A stretch of 64,000 bases of DNA, from assembly GCA_000320545.1 (NCBI GenBank), contig ADNK01001199.1, positions 57,389 to 121,388 on the forward strand, written 5' to 3'. The stretch is from Bigelowiella natans CCMP2755. Lineage: Eukaryota; Protista; Cercozoa. Position 1 is the stretch's first letter, and each line of letters opens with the position of its first letter. Shown here piece after piece: positions 37,807 to 49,075 of the stretch. The notes under the pieces were generated by a model, which saw only the letters and a list, made by a program, of their open reading frames with translations, had not been told where the DNA came from and ran no database searches. A program made the position numbers and the translations under genes.

Positions 37807-38253
37807 TAATCATATGCAACGGTTTATGTCGTCATATTTTATCGTAGCATAATTGTAAAAGACTTTAAATATAATGATTTTATTTAGCGTATGGTGAGTT
37901 TCGTTATCGAACATGCAAGATGTTATGTAGTCTAATTTTTAAAAAGATAGAACATCATAGGAGGCAATAATTTTGTTACATGCATGGATGCGGTGTGGGA
38001 GCTTTGCAGGAGACTACGTCGAGGGAGTATGTTGTGTTGTTTGTGGCCTGGAACGCAACCTATTTGCAATGCCAGGCCTGGGCGCACAGTTGCGTCCGGC
38101 CATATGTGCTCACCCTCACACATGCACCACACAGCTCAGCGCATCATCATCGAAACTGTCGTCTAGAATGTCCATTGGCCATGCTAGTATGATGTTGCAT
38201 GGTTGTCGCGGGATGGCATCAGTCATCAACAACGACTCACAACAAGCGCACCA

Positions 38254-38669
38254 TTTTAGCAGGCTTGCGGTAGCTGCTTAGCTTTTGTGCGCGGGACTGT
38301 GCTGATGTCACTGAGTGTCAACACGCGGTCCTGTGTGCGTTTGAATTGTGTTGATGACTTGTGACTTGCGCTGCATGCATGTGCGCATTGGGTTCCGGCG
38401 CATTCGCGAAGATTCTCGAATCTTCCAGAATTCTCTCGAATTCTCTGGAAGATTCTCGAAGCTTCCGGAATGCTCTCGAAGATTCTGGAAGATTCTCGAA
38501 TCTTCCGGAATGTTCTCGAAGCTTCTGGAAGATTCTCGAAGCTTCTCGAAGATTCCCGAAGTTCTGAGAACTTCCATGCGCATGTGCGCAGCGCAGCGTG
38601 CAGCACGAGTGGACGTGCGCATGCTGCGACAGCTCCTTGATCGTGGGTGGCGCGGCCAGACCGCTGACA
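38254..38669 (-). repeat. 3' LTR of Copia element
   Basis: Direct repeat of 44366-44781. In element sense it begins TGTCAGC and ends GCTAAAA; preceded by a short G-rich PPT-like ATGGGGGCG (38670-38678). Confidence 0.95.
38401..38570. promoter_or_regulatory. Heat-shock-element-like array (17 x 10 bp nnTTCnnGAA) in 3' LTR
   Basis: All 17 decamers end in GAA; 13 of the first 16 are exact nnTTCnnGAA, i.e. alternating inverted nGAAn units. Confidence 0.8.
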
Positions 38670-39056
38670 CGCCCCCATGGACGTGGTGACCACGATCAGA
38701 GTGCTGATGTGCACGTGCCATTTCTGCCATGGTGACAGAACTTTTGCACGGTGCTGCACATGGACGCCATTCCCAAAGGTTTCGGAGTCCGAATGGTTGG
38801 CAAAATTTTGCCGACCAAACATCGCACCACCAGACGCCTGAAACTCTGTGCAGAGGCACAAAATTCCCAGGCTTGCAACTGGGCAAGGTGCCATGGGCAT
38901 GGTGCACTCCGAAATCGGCAGGAAAAATTCTTGCCTGACTGGGCAAGGTGCCACCATTTCGGTACGAACTGGGACTTGTCCAAAAAATTAATTTTTTAAA
39001 CGACACCAGTGTGCTTCCAGAAAAAATTCTGGAATCCCTCACGTGCTTCCAGAAAA

Positions 39057-39096
39057 CATTCTGGAACATTCTGGAACATTCTGGAACATTCTGGAA
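39057..39096. promoter_or_regulatory. Second HSE-like array (CATTCTGGAA)x4 in the element's 3' untranslated region
   Basis: Perfect tandem decamer matching nnTTCnnGAA, preceded by two TTCCAGAA units. Confidence 0.6.
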
Positions 39097-39738
39097 CACC
39101 GATCTGGTTTCCCATAGTCAGGTCCCCAAATTTAGGAACTTCGATCGACCGTGCTTTTAACTCTTCACCTTGCCCCACCTCTTGTGATGAGGCGAGCTAC
39201 GTACACGTCCACGTCCCCCAATGGAGCTCTTCCCTGAGAGACGAAATTGCGGGCTGGGCTCCAAATACTGTTGGCTGGCTGGGTTGCAGCCATGCCAGAT
39301 CGAGAAGGAATGCCGAAGAGAATACAGTCTGCCTTCGTGGGTCTGAAGGCATCATACTCTGGTCATAGCGACATTGTTCTTCCACACCTCCACACAGGGA
39401 AGGCAGTTTTTTTCTGTCTTATTTATTTTTAATTTCGTAGGTATCTCGTAGTATATAGCCTTATATCTTGTTCTTGTTTTGTAGGTATCCTGTCTTTGTT
39501 CCACATTCGCCCCCATGATTGTGCAGTGTCTGGAAGACAGACACTGTGCAATTATATAATCCATAGCGTAATTTACATTCGCCCCCATCGGAGCTGTGCA
39601 CATAGCTGTGCATATAGTCCATAGTAAGATACGCAAGGAAAGGTACACACATATAAAGATGTGTGCCATTAAAACCTTGCAGCCTATATGTTCATATGTT
39701 GTAGGTTTCTAGATGGACGTGGGGCTTTTATAGGGCGT

Positions 39739-42700
39739 CTAAGCGGACGTGGGGCCGACAAGGCGAGGGAGCTTGTAAGGTAGAGCCTTTGTTGTTATTT
39801 TTCTTTTTCTGGTGCCTTGTAGCATGATGGTTAGTTTTTCTCTGTATGATATAGGGAACAAGAAATCACAGTGTTTCTTGTTGCTAGGTCCTGGTAGAGC
39901 CTTGGTAAGTATATCAGCGGGATTGTCCTCCCCAGGTATTTTGTTTATGCAGATCTGCTTGGTTTGATAGTTATCACGAACATTGTGATATTCTATCCTT
40001 ATGTTCTTGCCTTTCTGTGTGAATCCAGGCTTGGCTGCAATGGAGATAGCTGCTTGAGAGTCACAATACACAGGTACAGGGTTCGGTATTTTCATTTTTA
40101 ACTCCTGTAGTAACTGAGTGACATACACTAACTCTCTGCATATATCTGATAATGCTATGTACTCAGCCTCGCCACTGGACATAGCAACGACCTTTTGCTT
40201 GTTGCTCTTCCAGACAACAGGTGCGTTGCTTAGCGATATGAAATATCCTGAATATGATTTACCCGTTTTCTTGCAGGTCTTCCAGGAAGCATCGACGTAG
40301 GCTTTAAGCTCAGGTTTGGACGCTGCTTTAAAGGTAATTCTTTTGTCCTTTGTGTTGACCAGATATTGTAGTAAGCGCACTGCAGCGATGTAGTGTATAG
40401 TTCTAGGATCTTGACTGTAGGAAGCTAGACGAGATAGAGTGTAGCAGATGTCTGGCCTAGTAGCCACCGCTGCATACATTGCTGCTCCTATGATGGATCT
40501 GTATGCCTTCTGATCTACTTTTTCATGTTCCACGTATTCGTCTAACTTTGATCCTGTTATCATTGGTGTTTTTGCTCTTTTCGTAGGCGTGATATCATAC
40601 TTCTGGGCGAGTCTGGTGAGGTAATCTTCCTGCGATATCCAATAGTTTCCCTCATTGTCGCTACCAACTCTTATGCCCAGTGTTTTCTTTAGCTCGCCTT
40701 CATCGCGAAACTCAAACTTGTCGCCTATTCGCTTCATGACAAAGTCCAGGTCTTTCTTATCTTGATATGCTATGCATATGTCATCCACGAAACATGACAA
40801 TATGATGATTCTTCCTTGTCTGTGCATTATCATTAGGCAAGGATCGGAGTAAAGCTGGACGAAGCCAATGGCGTTGAGATGCTCGAGCAAGGTAAGGCTG
40901 AATATTGCACTTGCTTGTGTCAGCCCATAAATGCTTTTATTTACCAGTAGGGCTAGTGGAAGGCCACTGTTGTATAGCCGGATTTCATCAGGTGTCTTCG
41001 GCTTCCACCCTTTAGGTATTTCCATGTATACTTTACAGTCCATCTTTCCAGTTAGGAAAGCTGTAAGTATATCTATCCCGTGTAGTTTTAGCTTGAGGAT
41101 AGATGCTATGGCTAACATTATCCGAAAACTATTTAGGGACAACGTCGGGGAATAAGAGAAGAAGGAGTCTTCTCCCGGGATCTGCGTGAACCCTCGCGCG
41201 ACCAGCCTTGACTTATACCGAATGGTATAGTCTACATTTATTTTCTTCTTGAATACCCATTTAGATGTAACGAAATTTGTATCCTTAGGTCGCACTACCA
41301 GCGTAAACGTTCCAAGTTTTCGAAGCTGGTGCAGTTCCTCTTCCGTAGAAGGTATCCAATGCTTCTTATCATCTCCTGTGATTGCATCGTCATACGTCTT
41401 AGGAAGGTCCTCGATCTCATGTACTGATGGAGCTTTTATATTCATCAGGCGGTCGTAATAGCTACCAAGTATTCCGTAACGAATACCAGGTACTCCCCTA
41501 TTTTCTCTATTCGACCTTCGAGGCTTACTTTTTGCTTTTGTTTCAGGCCCACCATCCTCTGGCAACTCGTCAGTTGCACTGGATGGTTCGGGGGCGTCCG
41601 CGTCGGCAGGACCTTCTGGATAAAGGTACGCCAAAGCCGAATCACTAACTTTGTTTCTCTTCAGCGAAGGAAACTTAAACACTGTGTGGTACCATTTAGT
41701 TACACGGACTCTTTTAATTTTCAGCGTCTTCGTGGCGACGAGAAAAGTACCAAATCTATCGTCATATCCCAACATACGTACGTATTCACCTCTAGCACCC
41801 ATACCACCTGCAGGTCGGAGTTCCTTGTCAATGTGGTTTACTCCGATGCATCCCCAGGTAGTTAGATTCTTTAGATTTGGTTGCTCATGGTGCAGTAGTT
41901 CTTTAGGCGTTTTTCTACCAGGTGTGCTGCGATGTGAGGTGACGTTGTGGAGATATGCTGCAGTCTGAGCTGCGTAGGACCAGTATCCGACCGGTAAGCG
42001 TGCATGTTCTAACATAGCTCTTGTTTTCGCCATGATAGTCTGTATGTGACGCTCGGACATTCCATTTTGCTCAGGTGTTCGGGCGGTGCTAGGAACCCAT
42101 TTTATTCCTTCGGAGGTGAGCCAGCTATGTAGCTTTGCGCTCATATATTCACCTCCACCATCCGATCTGAATTCGTCTATGCTTCCACAACCTGGAAGCT
42201 TTCTGATGTGCTTTATGAACTGTATGGTTTTCTGCGTAACTTCGCTTTTCTTTCTCAAGAGCTCCAAGGTAACCCACCTTGTTCCTTCATGTACGAATAT
42301 TACGAAATACTTGTAACCATCCATGCTGTTAGGCATGGTCTTTACATCAGAGTGAATTCTATTCCACATCCGGTTTTTCTTGTGGATATCAGGTACACAT
42401 TTTTGCTTCTTTTTGACAGCATCGTCCTCAATCTTTGCTTTATTCCGATGCTGTTTCATCCTTTCTTGGGCGCTTGGATCAAAGATCGGAGATCTTTTTG
42501 TTTTGGCTACATCACAGGCCTTGCAAAAGATCTTCTTTGGTATTTTTATCGTCTTGGAATAAGGTAAACCTTCTGTAACTGCATAGGTGTCTCTTATCTT
42601 ATCCGCTGCGATGTGCCCTAGGATGTTATGTGCGTGCTTGATTGAAGATGGCTGTTTCATTGGGTAGGATTTAAATCTTTGTGTTTTTGTACTTTTGTTT

Positions 42701-44182
42701 ATTTGTTTATATCTCAAATAAAATAGGCCGTCGTCTTGAAAGTCCCCGAACGCGTATTCCTCTCCGTTGGCGGTAATGCTTATTCCTTGTTTTGTTCCTT
42801 TGTACTCGCTGCCACTCTTAACTAGTCTGTTTAGAGAGATCACATTGCCTGCAGCTTCTTCAGAGTACAAAGCTCCTTGTAGAACAATTTTGTGCATCTT
42901 TCCTTGCTTGTTTTTAGTAGTTAGTTTGACGTCGCCTGCATAATTCACAAAGAATCCTGTCCCATCTTTGCCAACTTCTATGTATCGTGGTTGAATAGGT
43001 TTCAACTCGTTGAAGAAGTCGCGGTCACAGAAGAAGTGGTTGTTGGCTCCGCTGTCGAGAAGGATCAAAGGCTTATGGTTGTACTTCAGCGTTTGCAGGT
43101 AAGAATTGTCGCGTGCCATCTTATTAATGTAAGAGGGTCTTTGGGAAGGGGAGCCATGATCAATGAAGGAATAGTGTTTTCCTTTGTTCTGCTTGCCTTC
43201 ATCTCTCATCTTGTTTCTGCATTCCTTTTCCCAATGTCCTTTCTTGCCACAGTAATGGCATTTTGTTCTTTTCTTTAAGTTCAAGAAATAGTCTTCTCTC
43301 TTTTGCTTCTTGGAATTGTCTTGATATGCTTCGCTGTTGTATCTGTTCTTTCCCTTTTTGAATTTTCTCTTGTAGGTATTCAGCTGACCTGTAAGTTCGT
43401 TTAGCCTTTTCTCCAAGCCATCGTACATCTTCACGTATTTGTGTTCTGCACTGGTGTGTCCTGCATTTTTCTTTGAAGGTCTCTGCCCGTCATCGAGCGA
43501 TCGGGAGTTCATGTGGGAACGTATCATGTCCACTGCAGAGTCGAAGGTACCATCTTTCTTGTTGTTGATGACTGTAACTATAGTCTCGTATTTTTCGCTA
43601 GGTACAAGTCCTCGAAGTAGAGTGGCAAGCGCTTGGTTGTCGGAGTATCCTTCGTGCTGTGCCCGAAGTCTTCTGATCGTCAAGTCAAGGTCAGAATGAT
43701 GCTTTGTGAAGTCTCCATTGTACTGACCCATGTTTATATCACTTAGTTTCGAATAAAGTTTCCTGACGGCTACAGGATTGGTAGGCTCGTACTTCTCCAG
43801 CAAGGCTGCTAAGGTAACTGCTACGTCTTTGGGTTTTCCTTCGAGTAGATCGAAGAATTTATCAGGAAGGGTAGCAGTGAGGAAGAATCTTCCTCTCTTT
43901 CTTTTGTTTATCTTTTCTTGTGATCCTCTTCCTTCAGGTTTGGGATTGAGGATATCGAATTGCTCCGGGGATAGCTTGAGTACTTCTCGTCGGTGAGCGG
44001 GGTCGGTGCGTACATTGACTTCTGTCACCTTTCCTTCTATTTCTATGTTGACATTGAAGCATGATTCCAAATCCGCTGCTTCAAAGGCAGACATTAGCTT
44101 GTACATGTAGGGCTTGTAGTTGCTACCATCGTACTTGAGGGTGAAGTTTTTTTAGTAGGGAGTCTATCTGCTTTTCTGACAT
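39739..44182 (-). CDS. Copia gag-pol polyprotein (open 39739-44106; likely true start 44182 separated by a frameshift in an A7 run)
   Basis: Zinc knuckle CHYCGKKGHWEKEC; protease LLDSGA; HNILGH..CKAC zinc site; integrase IHSDV/SDGGGEY/NGMSER; RT YKSRLVARGF..FVDDI; RNase H YVDASW..EAEYIAL..ADILTK. Integrase before RT is the Copia order. Confidence 0.95.
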
Positions 44183-44353
44183 GTTGTTTCGTTCCTATTT
44201 TCTTTGTTTTTCAGTGCTTTGGAGGCTTGACCGAAGATTGGCTGAGGGAATGCTGTTGTCGCTTTCAGTTCCTTCTTCTGGAAGGATGTAGCTGAAGGGG
44301 GGTGGGGGGTTGCTTGGTTCTTTTCTGAGTTGGTTCTCTAGCAAGTCCTCTTG

Positions 44354-44365
44354 AGGCTCATGACC
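44354..44365 (-). other. Primer-binding site GGTCATGAGCCT (half-tRNAiMet type)
   Basis: Directly follows the 5' LTR. Resembles GGTTATGAGCCC, the complement of the tRNAiMet anticodon stem-loop used by copia/Ty5-type elements. Confidence 0.75.
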
Positions 44366-44781
44366 TTTTAGCAGGCTTGCGGTAGCTGCTTAGCTTTTGT
44401 GCGCGGGACTGTGCTGATGTCACTGAGTGTCAACACGCGGTCCTGTGTGCGTTTGAATTGTGTTGATGACTTGTGACTTGCGCTGCATGCATGTGCGCAT
44501 TGGGTTCCGGCGCATTCGCGAAGATTCTCGAATCTTCCAGAATTCTCTCGAATTCTCTGGAAGATTCTCGAAGCTTCCGGAATGCTCTCGAAGATTCTGG
44601 AAGATTCTCGAATCTTCCGGAATGTTCTCGAAGCTTCTGGAAGATTCTCGAAGCTTCTCGAAGATTCCCGAAGTTCTGAGAACTTCCATGCGCATGTGCG
44701 CAGCGCAGCGTGCAGCACGAGTGGACGTGCGCATGCTGCGACAGCTCCTTGATCGTGGGTGGCGCGGCCAGACCGCTGACA
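44366..44781 (-). repeat. 5' LTR of Copia element (HSE array at 44513-44682)
   Basis: Direct repeat of 38254-38669, followed in element sense by the PBS. Confidence 0.95.
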
Positions 44782-44786
44782 CACCA

Positions 44787-45630
44787 TGCACACTGGCACA
44801 CGCTATGCTGTGTAGCATGACGTGTGTTATAGTGTTGTGTGTTGCACACCACGATGTGAGGTGCGACTAGATGGTTGCGGCGGCGAAAATGCGAGGTACG
44901 GTGTGCGACCGTGCCACCAACAAGCTAGCCGCTAGCCTGGCCTGCTAGCCTGTTGCATCTTGTCAAGAGTTTTGACTCACATTGCACGTGAGCCCCAGCG
45001 TAGAGCCGGCGAAAGCCATGCATTTGGGAGCCGGACGACACTTGTCTCGATTCGTCTGCGACTGTTGCAACGGCGGCATTCCAGCACGTCTACGTGTAGC
45101 AGACGTGCGTGAGACGATCGAGTGTCCCATCGATCGTGCGCTAGCTGGACTGTGCTAGCTAGCTAGTGTGCTTGCAAGTGCTTGCAAAGCACTCAAGACC
45201 AAAGCGGACGCAGCTGTGGGCCACACTGTGAAATGGCTGCGTCCATGGCCCACAGCTAGCTAGCTAGACAGCACCTGCCTGGGTCTTCCTGGACTTTCAC
45301 TTGTTGCAGTGCAATGTCATGCAACATCATGACCATTTCCCTAGCCTGCGTTCATTGATGGCATTTCTGGCCTCCACAGTGCTTGCACCTTTGACGCTTT
45401 GACAACTAGCACACGACCATGGTGTTCTGCTTGTGTTGTTGCCGATCAACCCGAGCGATCGAAAGAAAGAAAGCAACTTGATGGCCGGCTGCACTTCCAA
45501 AGTGCGCATTGCATGGCACTCGCAAAGTGCGAAAAAATGAATCCTCTGCAAGCCAAGAGCTTTGAGGTGGACACCTGAAGAGTGTCATGTGTTTCACCTC
45601 TGTCAGATTCAGCCATCAGACATGGATCTG
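44787..45630. repeat. Palindrome-rich, TpA-poor spacer (continues 37970-38248 on the other side of the insertion)
   Basis: (TAGC)3 at ~45154 and ~45255, GCTAGCC x3; all 9 TA dinucleotides in 45100-45630 lie in CTAG. Confidence 0.7.
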
Positions 45631-45875
45631 GAGCTAAAACAATGCCCACTTTGTTCGGCGAGAGTCTGCATGTGAAACGAGAGTTTCTAAAGGTAGTTTT
45701 CAGCATTAATATTTGACTTGTGGCAGATTGTTGCAGTCTTAATATTTTGTCCAAACTCAAAATGTGTAGAAAAACACAGATTGTTTTAGTATAATCTCGA
45801 GTAATCTCGCATAAATTATTATCTAATAACATCTACTAATTCCACACTTCTCGGCCCGCTGCCCGGACAGAATAA

Positions 45876-48236
45876 ATGGAGGAGGTGTGCACCTGCAGGC
45901 TTTCGGGTTCCCTTGTACTTCCTTTCCAAATAAATGGTCTATTAATACAGGTTCCCATTAAGCTGGTGGTAGTTGGGGGTAAGGGCGTCGGGAAGACCGC
46001 AATTGTGCACCGATTTAAGAAGCGAAAGTAGGCCATCATTTGTGATGTGTGTGGGCGATGAGAGGCAGTTGCTAATGACATTTCTTCTATTCGTTTTCAG
46101 CTTTCACCGTGAATACGTACCGACCGTCGGGTTTAACGTCAATACCTTCCAGGTGAACGAGCAAATTTTTACTCAGTCATGTCATGCGTAATTATGATCT
46201 CTAACCCTGCTCTCTCCCTCCCTCCCTCCCTCTCCCTCTCTTTTAGCTCACCAAAGCCATCCAGAAGCAGAGCTTAGACATCTGTCTCCAAATCTGGGAC
46301 GTTTCGCATCTTGAAATAGACGGTTGGATATATGTTGATATTACTTTCCAGCAATCATCTCCCAAAACAGATCGATCCCTCTTATTGTCAGGTTTTCATC
46401 TCGAGACAATCTTCGAAGATGTATCCGGTGTTATGATCGTCATAGATCCATCCGACTCAAAGAGTTTAATGGTCATCACACCACAAAATACAAAACACAC
46501 AGAAGGAGGAAATGATAGTGGGGAAAGCGGGCAGAAGATAGAAGCTCTAATAGTGTCTCCTCATTGTTAGGCCTTCGACGACTGGTTAAATGTAGTGCGG
46601 GATCTTGTCCCCAACACCAAGATTCCAGTCACGCTGGCCGTCACTAAGCTCGACTTATGCAAAGACCATACAACTTCAACAGCGTCAGTAGCACTTCACG
46701 CAAAATCCTATGCATGAAACATGTAACAAAGAGTTCTACGTGTATGTACACACGCCGATATTTTATGTGCGCTTATCTCTAACATTGCTATTCTCCCTTT
46801 TCAGGTCCTTGATTGCGTCCTCCATCGGCCTAACGCCACAATCGTCATTGGCGAAGCTCTTTGGCGCAGGGGGCAGCACCCAGGGGGAGCCAAAAAAGAA
46901 AGTCTCTGGTGCAAGAGGAGACGAGAAAACGGGATCGAAAGACGGAAGTGAGCAACTAATAATCTTCAAAGAACTTCATTGATTTTGTTCTTTCATTAAT
47001 TTTGTTCCAAATATCTATCCATCGGCGCCTGTGTACAAAATAGGAGTATTGCCCCCTTCATTGGAAGAGCTACGGTATTCAATACTAAGAACCATCTTAG
47101 CAGATTAAGTCGAGCTTGGTCGCGTCCAAATAGACTACATACTACCTCTATCTGAAAAAATATGCAATATTACTTGCTCGTAGCCCTCGGGAACAAGCTA
47201 AGATCCTCGACAAGTTCTGCGCCTTGGCAGGATTAGCGGAATGGAAGCAATGCAGGTTGTAAGATAGAAGGCATTGCAATATGACGTAGAGAATGAAGCG
47301 ATGCACTATAACTACGTCTGCGAGTACGATTGTAGTTGCTTCTCATTGATTGGCCTCTATTGTTCTCTTCTACTAGCTCCAAGACTGGGAAGAATGTCAA
47401 GGTGCTTAGCGAAAACGTTGCCAATTGCAGTGAATTCAGTGTTAAGTAGTTTCTTTTGCCAGAAGCAATACTTTCTCCTATTCGCAACAAAAACCTTCAA
47501 ATGTAACGCTAATGTATTTATCTCATGTTCTACGTTTGAAATGTGATTAGTGTCCTGGGTCAATTCTTTTGTAGAGCAATAGTTTATTTGAGATTCCACT
47601 CTGACGTATTTTCGCTTTCTCACTCAGGATGCGCTCTATTCGCTTGTCAATCTGAGCTTGCAGCCGCTCCTTGAAACGAGGAAAAAGAGGGATATTATAG
47701 AAGTAACCAATAGACATCATACTGCTGTCCATCATTTTGTTGTTGCATGTATTATGATAGTTTTCCCAGAATGTCATGATGACCCCCGCCCCTCCTTATG
47801 CTGTAGTCGCGCAAGAAATCATACATATTCCCAAATGATTGATATTTCATGCAAAATATTCTTCTGATCTTGATCACATGAGAGATTCCGTGTATCAGTG
47901 CGTAGTATAAAACACATCTTTGAATAACGGGCATAAAGGTTTATTGTATTCTATCTTTGTTATTGGGTCGTAAATAGGCAGAAGAAAAAATGAGGAATAA
48001 GTCCTCTGCGAAACCTTTCTTCACCCAAAAGTTTTACGAAATCCCTTCACACAAGTACTAGGCAGTCTAGTCTTCCCTCCCCCCTTTCACTCCCTTCCAC
48101 TTTTTATCTCCTCAATTCTATTCTTTGTGAGATCTTTAGTAATCCAAATATGACTTTCTGATACGAATGTATATGTGCCGTTCTAACTTTTTGTCTTGCA
48201 TGCATTTTTCGCTACAGAAAGAAAAAGAAAAGATGA
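45876..48236 (+). CDS. Atypical Rab-like small GTPase, multi-exon (3' end tentative)
   Basis: G1 KLVVVGGKGVGKT, G2 YVPTVG, degenerate G3 LQIWDVSH, G4 AVTKLD, G5 WKQCS|SKTGKNVK (~47240-47401), then DALYSLVNL. Probable last exon gives a ..HKKKKKR* polybasic end. Confidence 0.72.
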
Positions 48237-48284
48237 CGTGGGTTCTAATATGTAATTTGGCCGTACCTTGCGATGCGAAGTAGT

Positions 48285-49075
48285 TAGCTGAATTTACACC
48301 TTTAGACCTAGACATGTAGAGAAATTGAAAACTTGTATCCAAGCGCAAGCATATCGCATCTTGTCATCAACAATGCATATATGCAACACGTGCACTATTA
48401 TCTTGCAACCTAGCAACGTTGCAGTGCAATAATTATACCAAGCTGCGCATGCATGAGATGGATGTAATGATCGCACATGATTACGATGCTGTAAATCTAT
48501 AAATCTATAGAGCATAGTCACCCTAATGTAGCTTTTTTGCAGCGACTATGTTCCATGATATTGAGCTACAGCAGCATGTGCACACGCTACGTACATAGCT
48601 AGCTAGCTAGGCCAGTACCCTTCGATTCACATTTAGATAATTTTACGTGTAGAGATGTCTTGTTGGAACTTGCGATGCGTGTAACTAGATCTAGAGATAG
48701 CTAGATAGCGCCATGCATCGGGACATATAAGCTAATTGGATGTAGACGAAATGTCTGGAATATGCGCATATATAGCGCCGCACACATGCTAGCTAGCTAG
48801 CTAGCATGTCACGTCACAGCACGACCATGCATGCTAGCAGCATGACGTACGTACAACTAGACAAGCTAGTACATTCTAGCATTGAGAGCTCATCTAGTAC
48901 TGAGTACGTCATGTCACATTTTGCTCGATTGTCAAGGGCGGGGCCAATGCTAGATATATACAATAAATGCGCTGCTGGAGCGTGTCGATCTTCGTACGAT
49001 ACCTATATAGCAGCTTCCTCTACACACCTAGACATGCACACTTTTTGACATGACATTGACTAGGTCTACTAGAAC
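48285..49075. repeat. Convergent-spacer tract with (TAGC)n and TCTAGA motifs
   Basis: AGCTAGCTAGCTAG ~48597, CTAGATCTAGAGATAGCTAG ~48686, GCTAGCTAGCTAGCTAGC ~48788, CCTAGACATG x2, GTACGTAC. Confidence 0.75.

What the first reader, a model, noticed from the sequence alone, without database searches (positions are those of the whole stretch)
44513..44682. Copia LTR carries a very large heat-shock-element array (about 34 nGAAn units)
Seen: 170 bp of each 416-bp LTR is a 10-bp-periodic array (cattcgcgaa gattctcgaa tcttccagaa ...). The TTC and GAA positions are held while the 'nn' positions vary, which fits selection on a binding motif better than simple slippage. It sits 100-270 nt into the LTR (U3). 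Established: HSF trimers bind alternating nGAAn units, and heat-activated Copia elements such as ONSEN in Arabidopsis use LTR HSEs, generally with far fewer units. Inference: a strongly heat/proteotoxic-stress-inducible retrotransposon in an alga. Its two LTRs could also make the flanking GT23-like and Rab-like genes heat-responsive.
Basis: partly seen in the sequence, partly recalled or inferred. Interest (0 to 1): 0.8.

Follow-up and report, generated by a model that had tools for sequence, protein, structure and literature searches.

The report
Copia LTR with giant heat-shock-element array
A young, intact jumping gene of the alga Bigelowiella natans carries in each end repeat a row of about 32 correctly spaced binding motifs for the heat-shock transcription factor, far more than in known heat-activated retrotransposons; its RNA is already abundant in ordinary RNA data, and heat induction is still untested.

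Summary
The window carries an intact Ty1/copia element on the minus strand (38254-44781), with identical 416-bp LTRs and a 5-bp TSD. Each LTR holds 35 GAA/TTC triplets. Of 32 slots in strict 5-bp alternating phase, 29 are perfect and 3 read GAG. In sense orientation the array lies at LTR positions 97-270.

The scan found this family before on other DNA of this genome. New here:
- The organism is Bigelowiella natans, by exact protein matches.
- It has HSF genes with a conserved recognition helix.
- Its small-HSP promoters carry 4-6-unit HSEs of the same grammar.
- All ~40 LTR copies examined (78-100% identical) keep the array, at 13-39 triplets, with length differences almost all in 10-bp steps.
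- Base conservation is moderate and depends on the method: core/spacer change ratios of 0.34, 0.37 and 0.67. It is concentrated on the G and first A.
- One element's two LTRs differ only by a 20-bp array indel, so slippage is fast.
- Four spliced RNA runs hold the element. Poly(A) tails place the R/U5 border at LTR position 335-340, downstream of the array.
- GT..AG joints on the opposite strand show a spliced antisense RNA.
- A second, internal 8-unit array exists.

HSF binding, heat induction and the TSS remain untested. Verdict: a new variant of the ONSEN-type strategy.

The parts
38254..44781 (-). Complete Ty1/copia LTR retrotransposon (6.5 kb)
   Evidence: Identical LTRs 6112 bp apart. 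5-bp TSD TGGTG at 44782-44786 and 38249-38253, read on the minus strand. One 1455-aa ORF.
44366..44781 (-). 5' LTR (416 bp, starts TGTCAGCGG, ends GCTAAAA)
   Evidence: The first aligned column varies among copies, so the LTR starts at the TG.
38254..38669 (-). 3' LTR, 100% identical to the 5' LTR
44513..44686 (-). HSE-type array in the 5' LTR (sense LTR positions 97-270): 32 in-phase slots (29 GAA/TTC, 3 GAG) plus 3 out-of-phase triplets at the upstream edge
38401..38574 (-). Identical array in the 3' LTR
39055..39098 (-). Second, internal array: TTCCAGAATG x4 (8 perfect phased units) in the element's 3' untranslated part, about 425 bp upstream of the 3' LTR
   Evidence: Present with 6 or 8 units in other copies, and with spacer substitutions in a diverged subfamily.
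39739..44106 (-). gag-pol polyprotein ORF, 1455 aa, uninterrupted
   Evidence: Pfam hits: Retrotran_gag_2 (aa 80-198), Pol_BBD (349-432), rve (583-678), RVT_2 (933-1183). Integrase lies before RT, which is the copia order.
44443..44448 (-). Poly(A) addition sites, marking the R/U5 border at sense LTR position 335-340 (equivalent to 38331-38336 in the 3' LTR)
   Evidence: Non-templated T runs of 22-23 nt to the left of 44443 and 44448 in RNA contigs of run X1. Numbering.
44347..44365 (-). Putative primer-binding site directly after the 5' LTR (GGTCATGAGCCTCAAGAGG; GGTTATGAGCC in most copies)
   Evidence: Conserved downstream of every 5' LTR of the family. The tRNA match was not tested.
38670..38679 (-). 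Putative polypurine tract (CCATGGGGGC) directly upstream of the 3' LTR
   Evidence: Identical upstream of all 3' LTRs of the family.
43096..44214 (+). Region with GT..AG splice joints on the plus strand, i.e. a spliced antisense RNA over gag and the 5' UTR
   Evidence: Joints 43096>43374/43477, 43544>43600, 43687>43745, 43811>43936/44213 and 44000/44004>44214; the 43544, 43687 and 43811>43936 joints are in all four RNA runs, the others in one to three. Splice-site letters read on the plus strand.
45876..48392 (+). Neighbouring Rab-like host gene, spliced and expressed, divergent from the 5' LTR (first coding exon about 1.1 kb away)
   Evidence: GT..AG joints in all four runs. P-loop exon seen.

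Best explanation
The 170-bp array is a cis-regulatory row of heat-shock-factor (HSF) binding sites in the promoter-bearing part of the LTR of a recently active Ty1/copia family of Bigelowiella natans.

Proposed mechanism:
- HSF trimers bind three adjacent inverted nGAAn units.
- 32 contiguous in-phase slots could seat about ten trimers side by side and recruit the transcription machinery to a core promoter in the conserved block just downstream. Transcripts end at LTR position 335-340.
- The array grows and shrinks by slippage or template switching in 10-bp (two-unit) steps, which keeps the phase. Purifying selection on the transposing lineages keeps the HSF-contact bases (G and first A).
- The result is a tunable, very strong HSF-dependent enhancer. 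It probably gives high basal transcription and, by inference, a further rise under heat or proteotoxic stress.

What is shown and what is inferred:
- Shown: the anatomy, family-wide retention, the host HSF and HSE regulon, transcription, and the poly(A) site.
- Inferred: HSF binding, enhancer activity, heat response, and a TSS downstream of the array.
For: 1. HSE grammar. There are 29 perfect and 3 GAG units in strict alternating 5-bp phase, with a 17-unit perfect run. The window has 51 three-unit HSE matches against 1.0 expected. The genome has 466 seven-unit matches against 0 for the reversed control.
2. Retention. All ~40 LTR copies examined, 78-100% identical and including old solo LTRs with TSDs, keep an array of 13-39 triplets at the same place; in most the span is 10n+2 bp.
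3. Base constraint. Fitch changes per column are 0.36 (core), 1.04 (spacer) and 0.98 (rest of LTR). An MST over 42 distinct in-phase 10-mers gives 2.8 (core) against 7.7 (spacer) changes per site, p=5e-4. Within the core, the G and first A change 1.5 per site and the third position 5.5 per site.
4. A host system that reads this grammar. There are two HSF-DBD loci. One is a 289-aa expressed protein matching the human HSF4/HSF2/HSF1 DBDs at E=2e-21, with recognition helix SFVRNLNMYGFR. Small-HSP genes carry 4-6-unit HSEs 250-295 bp upstream of the ATG, with the same CTC-type variants. HSP genes have 1.95 HSE-like clusters per 1.5 kb against 0.65 for controls, p=3e-4.
5. Position. The array lies upstream of the poly(A) site at LTR position 335-340 and directly upstream of the most conserved LTR block.
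6. Activity. The family is intact and young, with LTR pairs differing by 0-5 substitutions, and it is present in four RNA runs.
7. Precedent. HSE-bearing LTRs drive heat activation in ONSEN (PMC5059998) and in Macrostomum elements, where HSE mutation abolishes the response (PMC12801592).
Against: - There is no HSF-binding or heat-shock data. The four RNA runs have unknown conditions and are contigs only, so they show neither level, strand nor TSS.
- The conservative nearest-unit test finds only a 0.67 core/spacer ratio (p=0.14). The alignment-based test is biased towards in-phase alignment. Splitting the core into G/A2 and A3 positions was done post hoc.
- The array has clear minisatellite dynamics: a 40-bp higher-order unit, and a 20-bp indel without substitutions between the LTRs of one element. 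Much of its length could therefore be neutral expansion of a few functional units.
- The HSP70 and HSP90 promoters have no perfect 3-unit HSE within 1.5 kb.
- If the TSS lay upstream of the array, the array would be in R rather than U3.
Confidence: 0.6

Rival explanations
1. Plain minisatellite. A short HSE-like or accidental palindromic 10-mer in the LTR expanded by replication slippage or reverse-transcriptase template switching. It is carried along neutrally, and most or all units have no function.
For: - A 40-bp higher-order repeat with 89% matches.
- Length polymorphism almost all in 10-bp steps.
- Two LTRs of one element differ by a 20-bp array indel and no substitution.
- The internal array consists of 100% identical 10-mers with 6 or 8 units among copies.
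- The conservative constraint test is not significant.
Against: - The array is kept in every subfamily down to 78% LTR identity.
- Its spacers change as fast as the rest of the LTR, while the cores change about 3 times more slowly in two of three tests.
- The changes that do occur avoid the G and first A.
- Pure slippage predicts equal diversity at all ten positions.
- The same grammar sits in host small-HSP promoters.
Confidence: 0.2
2. The array works as a nucleic-acid structure or as sites for another factor, not for HSF. Because GAA and TTC alternate, the strand is self-complementary. As part of U3 it is transcribed at the RNA's 3' end, where it could form long hairpins (for packaging, dimerisation, stability or small-RNA production). 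As DNA it could form a cruciform or a 10-bp-periodic structure that affects nucleosomes.
For: - The RNA fold is -88.4 kcal/mol, z = -6.35 against shuffles.
- The array is present in RNA contigs.
- Sense and antisense RNAs coexist.
- The opposite-strand self-match is 73% identical.
Against: - Strong folding follows automatically from HSE grammar, so it does not discriminate.
- The commonest junction, TTCGAGAA, has no complementary TTCTCGAA on the same strand, so the spacers do not pair, and no compensatory pattern is seen.
- The third-position tolerance (CTC, GAG) matches the variants in host HSEs.
- A 2-nt spacer fits HSF and not STAT-type TTCnnnGAA sites (established knowledge).
Confidence: 0.1
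3. The array is an orientation-independent element whose main output is the antisense RNA (copy-number control or host silencing trigger), not sense genomic RNA.
For: - GT..AG joints on the plus strand over gag and the 5' UTR in the RNA runs, three of them in all four, at contig depths similar to the element's other contigs.
- HSEs are symmetric.
- A second array lies inside the element near its 3' end.
Against: - The start of the antisense RNA is unknown.
- Sense transcripts with poly(A) tails in the LTR also exist.
- This reading does not exclude the best explanation.
Confidence: 0.1

Closest known systems
ONSEN/COPIA78 and other heat-responsive Brassicaceae Copia elements (TERESTRA, COPIA37)
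   Same: A Ty1/copia element with adjacent nGAAn motifs in the LTR. In ONSEN these motifs are bound by HSFA2 and drive heat activation. New HREs arose there by duplication of a proto-HRE (PMC5059998).
   Different: ONSEN has a cluster of four nGAAn and TERESTRA up to six (PMC5059998). Here there are 32 contiguous in-phase slots (13-39 triplets across the family), plus a second internal array. The host is a rhizarian alga. Heat response and HSF binding are untested, and RNA is abundant in ordinary RNA runs.
HSE-containing Ty3/Mdg4 LTR retrotransposons of the flatworm Macrostomum lignano
   Same: LTR promoters independently acquired canonical HSEs. HSE mutation abolishes heat induction. The authors predict more such cases across the tree of life (PMC12801592).
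   Different: One to four HSEs per LTR, mostly in a different superfamily, and experimentally validated. Here the array is an order of magnitude longer and unvalidated.
Helitron-embedded HSE clusters in Caenorhabditis (Helitron1_CE)
   Same: Repetitive, overlapping tandem HSEs carried by a transposon. In C. elegans the high-density HSE clusters occur only inside that TE family. Some genomes have more than 50 HSEs per 1-kb window (PMC6927752). Here all long arrays found in the genome also belong to one TE family.
   Different: That is a DNA transposon (Helitron), not an LTR promoter. There HSF-1 ChIP shows binding, and nearby host genes are rewired.
Host HSEs of B. natans small-HSP genes
   Same: Same alternating 5-bp grammar and the same tolerated variants (CTC, GAC/GAG), located 250-295 bp upstream of the ATG.
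   Different: Only 4-6 units, and not tandemly expanded.

Membership tests
Ty1/copia LTR retrotransposon | Two direct LTRs flanked by a 5-bp target-site duplication | tested here: met
   416-bp LTRs are 100% identical and the TSD is TGGTG. Other copies also have 5-bp TSDs.
Ty1/copia LTR retrotransposon | gag-protease-integrase-RT order (integrase before RT), with an RVT_2-type RT | tested here: met
   Retrotran_gag_2, rve (aa 583-678) and RVT_2 (aa 933-1183, E=6e-45) lie in one 1455-aa ORF.
Ty1/copia LTR retrotransposon | PBS after the 5' LTR and PPT before the 3' LTR | tested here: inconclusive
   Conserved GGT(C/T)ATGAGCC after all 5' LTRs and ATGGGGGC before all 3' LTRs. No tRNA complementarity was tested. 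The LTR ends in AAA, not the usual CA.
Heat shock element (HSF binding site) | At least three contiguous inverted nGAAn units on a 5-bp phase | tested here: met
   29 perfect units in 32 in-phase slots, with a 17-unit perfect run.
Heat shock element (HSF binding site) | The host encodes an HSF with a conserved DNA-recognition helix and uses HSEs at heat-shock genes | tested here: met
   PF00447 hits at two loci. E=2e-21 to the human HSF DBDs, helix SFVRNLNMYGFR. 4-6-unit HSEs upstream of small-HSP genes, and enrichment over controls at p=3e-4.
Heat shock element (HSF binding site) | Bound by HSF | not testable with these tools
   Needs EMSA or ChIP.
Heat shock element (HSF binding site) | Located upstream of the transcription start (U3) | tested here: inconclusive
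   The array (positions 97-270) is upstream of the poly(A) site at 335-340. The TSS is not mapped because contigs cannot show RNA starts.
ONSEN-like heat-activated retrotransposon | Transcription strongly induced by heat through the LTR HSEs | not testable with these tools
   No heat-shock RNA run was identifiable. The four RNA runs, of unknown conditions, already hold the element.
Minisatellite (tandem repeat evolving by slippage) | Copy-number polymorphism in whole repeat units among alleles or copies | tested here: met
   13-39 triplets across copies; most array spans are 10n+2 bp (62-212 bp). A 20-bp indel lies between the LTRs of one element.
Minisatellite (tandem repeat evolving by slippage) | No position-specific constraint within the unit | tested here: not met
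   Core/spacer change ratio is 0.34 and 0.37, p=5e-4, although 0.67 with p=0.14 in the conservative test.

The most novel reading that the evidence does not exclude
The family's arrays are the only long HSE arrays found in the 91-Mb genome. They total over a thousand nGAAn units across at least 40 LTRs plus the internal arrays. They could therefore be the dominant HSF-binding sink of the B. natans nucleus: a length-tunable 'rheostat' enhancer that drives both sense RNA and spliced antisense RNA. That would couple transposition, its own antisense control, and possibly the host heat-shock response (by HSF titration, as with human satellite III stress bodies) to proteotoxic stress.
Probability: 0.12. 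Interest if true: 0.8.

Novelty: new variant of a known kind. Interest (0 to 1): 0.55.

Why it matters
Retrotransposons that hijack the heat-shock response have been validated only in Brassicaceae plants and one flatworm, each with one to six motifs. This case would add a third, very distant lineage (Rhizaria). It is also an extreme design: about ten potential HSF trimer sites in a row, varying in length by two-unit steps among otherwise near-identical copies. That natural series of 13-39 triplets is a ready-made test of how HSE number sets promoter output. It would also help ask how a transposon promoter evolves under slippage plus selection. Finally, it gives a compact, probably strong promoter for B. 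natans, an alga with few genetic tools.

Tried and rejected
- A strict search for perfect 3-unit HSEs within 1.5 kb upstream of six HSP70 paralogues found none. Only after allowing one mismatch and adding small-HSP genes and controls did a host HSE signal appear. HSP90 shows nothing convincing.
- The nearest-reference-unit constraint test first gave an inflated result, because I had left the last reference unit out. Corrected and de-duplicated, it is not significant. I report it beside the two tests that are.
- The alignment-based Fitch test is kept, but it is biased: MAFFT aligns non-orthologous units in phase.
- RNA contigs could not give the TSS, the strand or expression levels, and read laying is capped at one call.
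- The exact polyprotein is not in the protein collection, so no transcript contigs could be fetched by that route.
- The RNA fold of the array does not discriminate between models.
- A literature search found no B. natans transposon or heat-shock RNA-seq paper.
- The big protein searches, structure prediction and complex prediction were not needed.

Full report
**1. What is there**

The reported stretch (44513-44682) is a period-10 tandem array. An identical copy lies at 38402-38565. The two arrays sit in two 416-bp direct repeats that are 100% identical and 6112 bp apart.

Between the repeats, on the minus strand, is one uninterrupted 1455-aa ORF (39739-44106). It has copia-type gag, integrase and RVT_2 reverse transcriptase in the copia order. 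The element (38254-44781) is flanked by a 5-bp duplication, TGGTG. It is therefore an intact, very young Ty1/copia retrotransposon on the minus strand. The LTR at 44366-44781 is its 5' LTR.

**2. Anatomy of the array**

- The sense strand has 35 GAA/TTC triplets.
- From position 111 to 266 there are 32 consecutive slots on a strict 5-bp phase with alternating orientation. Of these, 29 are perfect and 3 read GAG. The longest uninterrupted perfect run is 17 units.
- Three triplets at the upstream edge are out of phase.
- The three-unit HSE pattern occurs 51 times in the window against 1.0 expected.
- The array also has a 40-bp (eight-unit) higher-order period with 89% matches. Part of the spacer variety is therefore inherited from a duplicated 40-bp block and is not independent.

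**3. Second, internal array**

A second array lies inside the element at 39055-39098. It has eight perfect units (TTCCAGAATG x4) and sits about 425 bp upstream of the 3' LTR.

**4. Organism and host machinery**

- An HSP70 ORF and an HSF ORF from the same assembly are exact matches to EukProt/JGI models of Bigelowiella natans.
- The genome has two loci with the HSF DNA-binding domain.
- The 289-aa HSF matches the human HSF4, HSF2 and HSF1 DNA-binding domains at E=2e-21 and keeps the recognition helix (SFVRNLNMYGFR).
- Host heat-shock genes use the same grammar. Several small-HSP genes have 4-6-unit HSEs 250-295 bp upstream of the ATG, some with CTC or GAC in place of TTC or GAA.
- Across 19 HSP70, HSP20 and HSP90 loci there are 1.95 HSE-like clusters per 1.5 kb upstream, against 0.65 for 20 tubulin and EF-Tu-family controls (p=3e-4).
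- HSP70 and HSP90 have no perfect three-unit HSE.

**5. The family**

- The LTR has at least 40 copies in the 91-Mb assembly, at 78-100% identity. They include at least nine full-length elements, whose LTR pairs differ by 0-5 substitutions, and old solo LTRs with their own TSDs.
- Every copy examined carries the array at the same place. The arrays have 13-39 triplets, and most spans are 10n+2 bp (62-212 bp).
- Seven-unit HSE windows occur 466 times in the genome against 0 for the reversed control. All listed hits are this family.
- A pattern built to exclude the LTR array found only the element's own internal array (19 hits). Within those filters, long HSE arrays in this genome belong to this one family.

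**6. Selection or slippage?**

Both are seen.

*Evidence for slippage.* There is the higher-order repeat and the 10-bp length steps. In addition, one element's two LTRs differ by a 20-bp array indel and by no substitution.

*Evidence for constraint.* Three tests give different strengths.
- Fitch parsimony on a MAFFT alignment gives 0.36 changes per core column, 1.04 per spacer column and 0.98 for the rest of the LTR. MAFFT aligns non-orthologous units in phase, which favours this result.
- Assigning each diverged unit to its nearest reference unit is biased the other way. It gives a per-site ratio of 0.67, p=0.14 (after correcting).
- A minimum-spanning-tree count over the 42 distinct in-phase 10-mers gives 2.8 (core) against 7.7 (spacer) changes per site, p=5e-4.

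In the last two tests the core changes concentrate on the third position (TTC>CTC, GAA>GAG). The G and the first A hardly change (1.5 per site). This split was made post hoc. It agrees with the variants tolerated in the host HSEs and, from my own knowledge of HSF-DNA contacts, with the lesser importance of that position.

My reading is moderate evidence that the HSF-contact bases are maintained while unit number drifts.

**7. RNA evidence**

The four runs laid (four studies, contigs only, conditions unknown) are RNA:
- The neighbouring Rab-like gene appears with six GT..AG joints.
- The intergenic stretch 44800-45800 is empty or nearly so in three of them.

All four hold contigs of the element, including the array. 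Their contig depths are orders of magnitude above those of the Rab-like gene. Depth of summed multi-copy contigs is not a measure of expression. I conclude only that the family is clearly transcribed without any known heat treatment.

In run X1, two contigs carry non-templated T runs to the left of 44443 and 44448. These are poly(A) tails of minus-strand transcripts ending at LTR position 335-340. This sets the R/U5 border 65-70 nt downstream of the array. The TSS must lie upstream of it.

The block directly after the array (GCGCCGGAACCCAATGCGCACATGCATGCAGCGCAAGT) is the best conserved part of the LTR. It is my candidate core promoter, but the TSS is not mapped. 'U3' is therefore probable, not shown.

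**8. Antisense RNA**

Unexpectedly, all listed joints inside the element (43096-44214) have GT..AG on the plus strand, with good AG|GT exon borders and pyrimidine tracts; three of them are in all four runs and the rest in one to three. They are antisense to the polyprotein. A spliced antisense RNA therefore covers gag and the 5' UTR. Its start is unknown, because only 43000-48999 could be laid.

**9. Comparison with known cases**

- ONSEN LTRs have a cluster of four nGAAn bound by HSFA2, and TERESTRA up to six (PMC5059998).
- Flatworm LTR elements have one to four HSEs, which are necessary for heat induction (PMC12801592).
- Caenorhabditis Helitrons carry overlapping tandem HSEs at densities above 50 per kb, bound by HSF-1 (PMC6927752).

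This element combines the ONSEN-type location (a copia LTR) with Helitron-type density, in a rhizarian alga. I file it as a new variant of a known kind.

Membership in 'heat-activated retrotransposons' cannot be claimed, because neither heat induction nor HSF binding was testable. The claim made here is 'works like'.

**10. Verdict**

An HSF-site array is the best explanation (0.6).
- A hitch-hiking minisatellite (0.2) and structural or antisense-centred readings (0.1 each) remain open.
- The scan reported the same family before from other windows of this genome. Those notes served as leads only.

Noticed in passing
window 43096-44214 (+): Nine listed GT..AG joints on the strand opposite to the polyprotein, three of them in all four RNA runs and with alternative acceptors and donors. 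They show a spliced antisense RNA over gag and the 5' UTR of the copia family. Its promoter and full extent are unknown.
   Followed up: partly
window 39055-39098: An internal perfect HSE-type array (TTCCAGAATG x4) in the element's 3' untranslated part, followed by further TTCTGGAA and TTCCAGAA half-sites. Other copies have 6 or 8 units. A diverged subfamily has spacer substitutions with intact cores.
   Followed up: yes
L018 vs L025 (contig C2046, two LTRs of one element): The two LTRs of one element differ by a 20-bp (two 10-mer) indel inside the array and by no substitution. The array length therefore mutates faster than single bases, or changes during reverse transcription.
   Followed up: yes
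window 44366-44781 and 38254-38669: The LTR is strongly TpA-depleted (observed/expected 0.14, against 0.72-0.83 in the flanks and 0.75 for the whole element). It is also GC-richer (53% against 43-46%). Another first-stage note (s1-730582) flags the same depletion. The cause was not examined.
   Followed up: no
window 44687-44705 and 44480-44500 (sense LTR positions ~78-96 and ~283-300): The array is bracketed by a direct repeat, TGCGCACATGC. The upstream copy is part of the palindrome CATGCGCATG and the downstream copy of GCATGCATGC. Both are conserved across subfamilies. They could be further factor sites or a footprint of how the array arose.
   Followed up: no
L059, L062, L063, L064 (small-HSP genes of the same genome): Paralogous small-HSP genes share a 4-6-unit HSE about 250-295 bp upstream of the ATG (for example TTCggGACagTTCtgGAAtgTTCccGAA). 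This appears to be the first sequence-level hint of a canonical HSF regulon in a chlorarachniophyte.
   Followed up: partly
window 44366 / 38254 (LTR 3' end): The LTR ends in ...GCT(A/G)AAA rather than the usual ...CA. The terminal inverted repeat is TGTCAGCGG / CCGCTGAAA. The putative PBS, GGT(C/T)ATGAGCC, was not matched to a tRNA.
   Followed up: no
window 44365/44366 loose ends in runs X1, X5, X9: RNA contigs run from the LTR end into different host flanks, including this copy's own 3' flank (38224-38253) in X1. This suggests read-through past the LTR poly(A) site into neighbouring host DNA.
   Followed up: no
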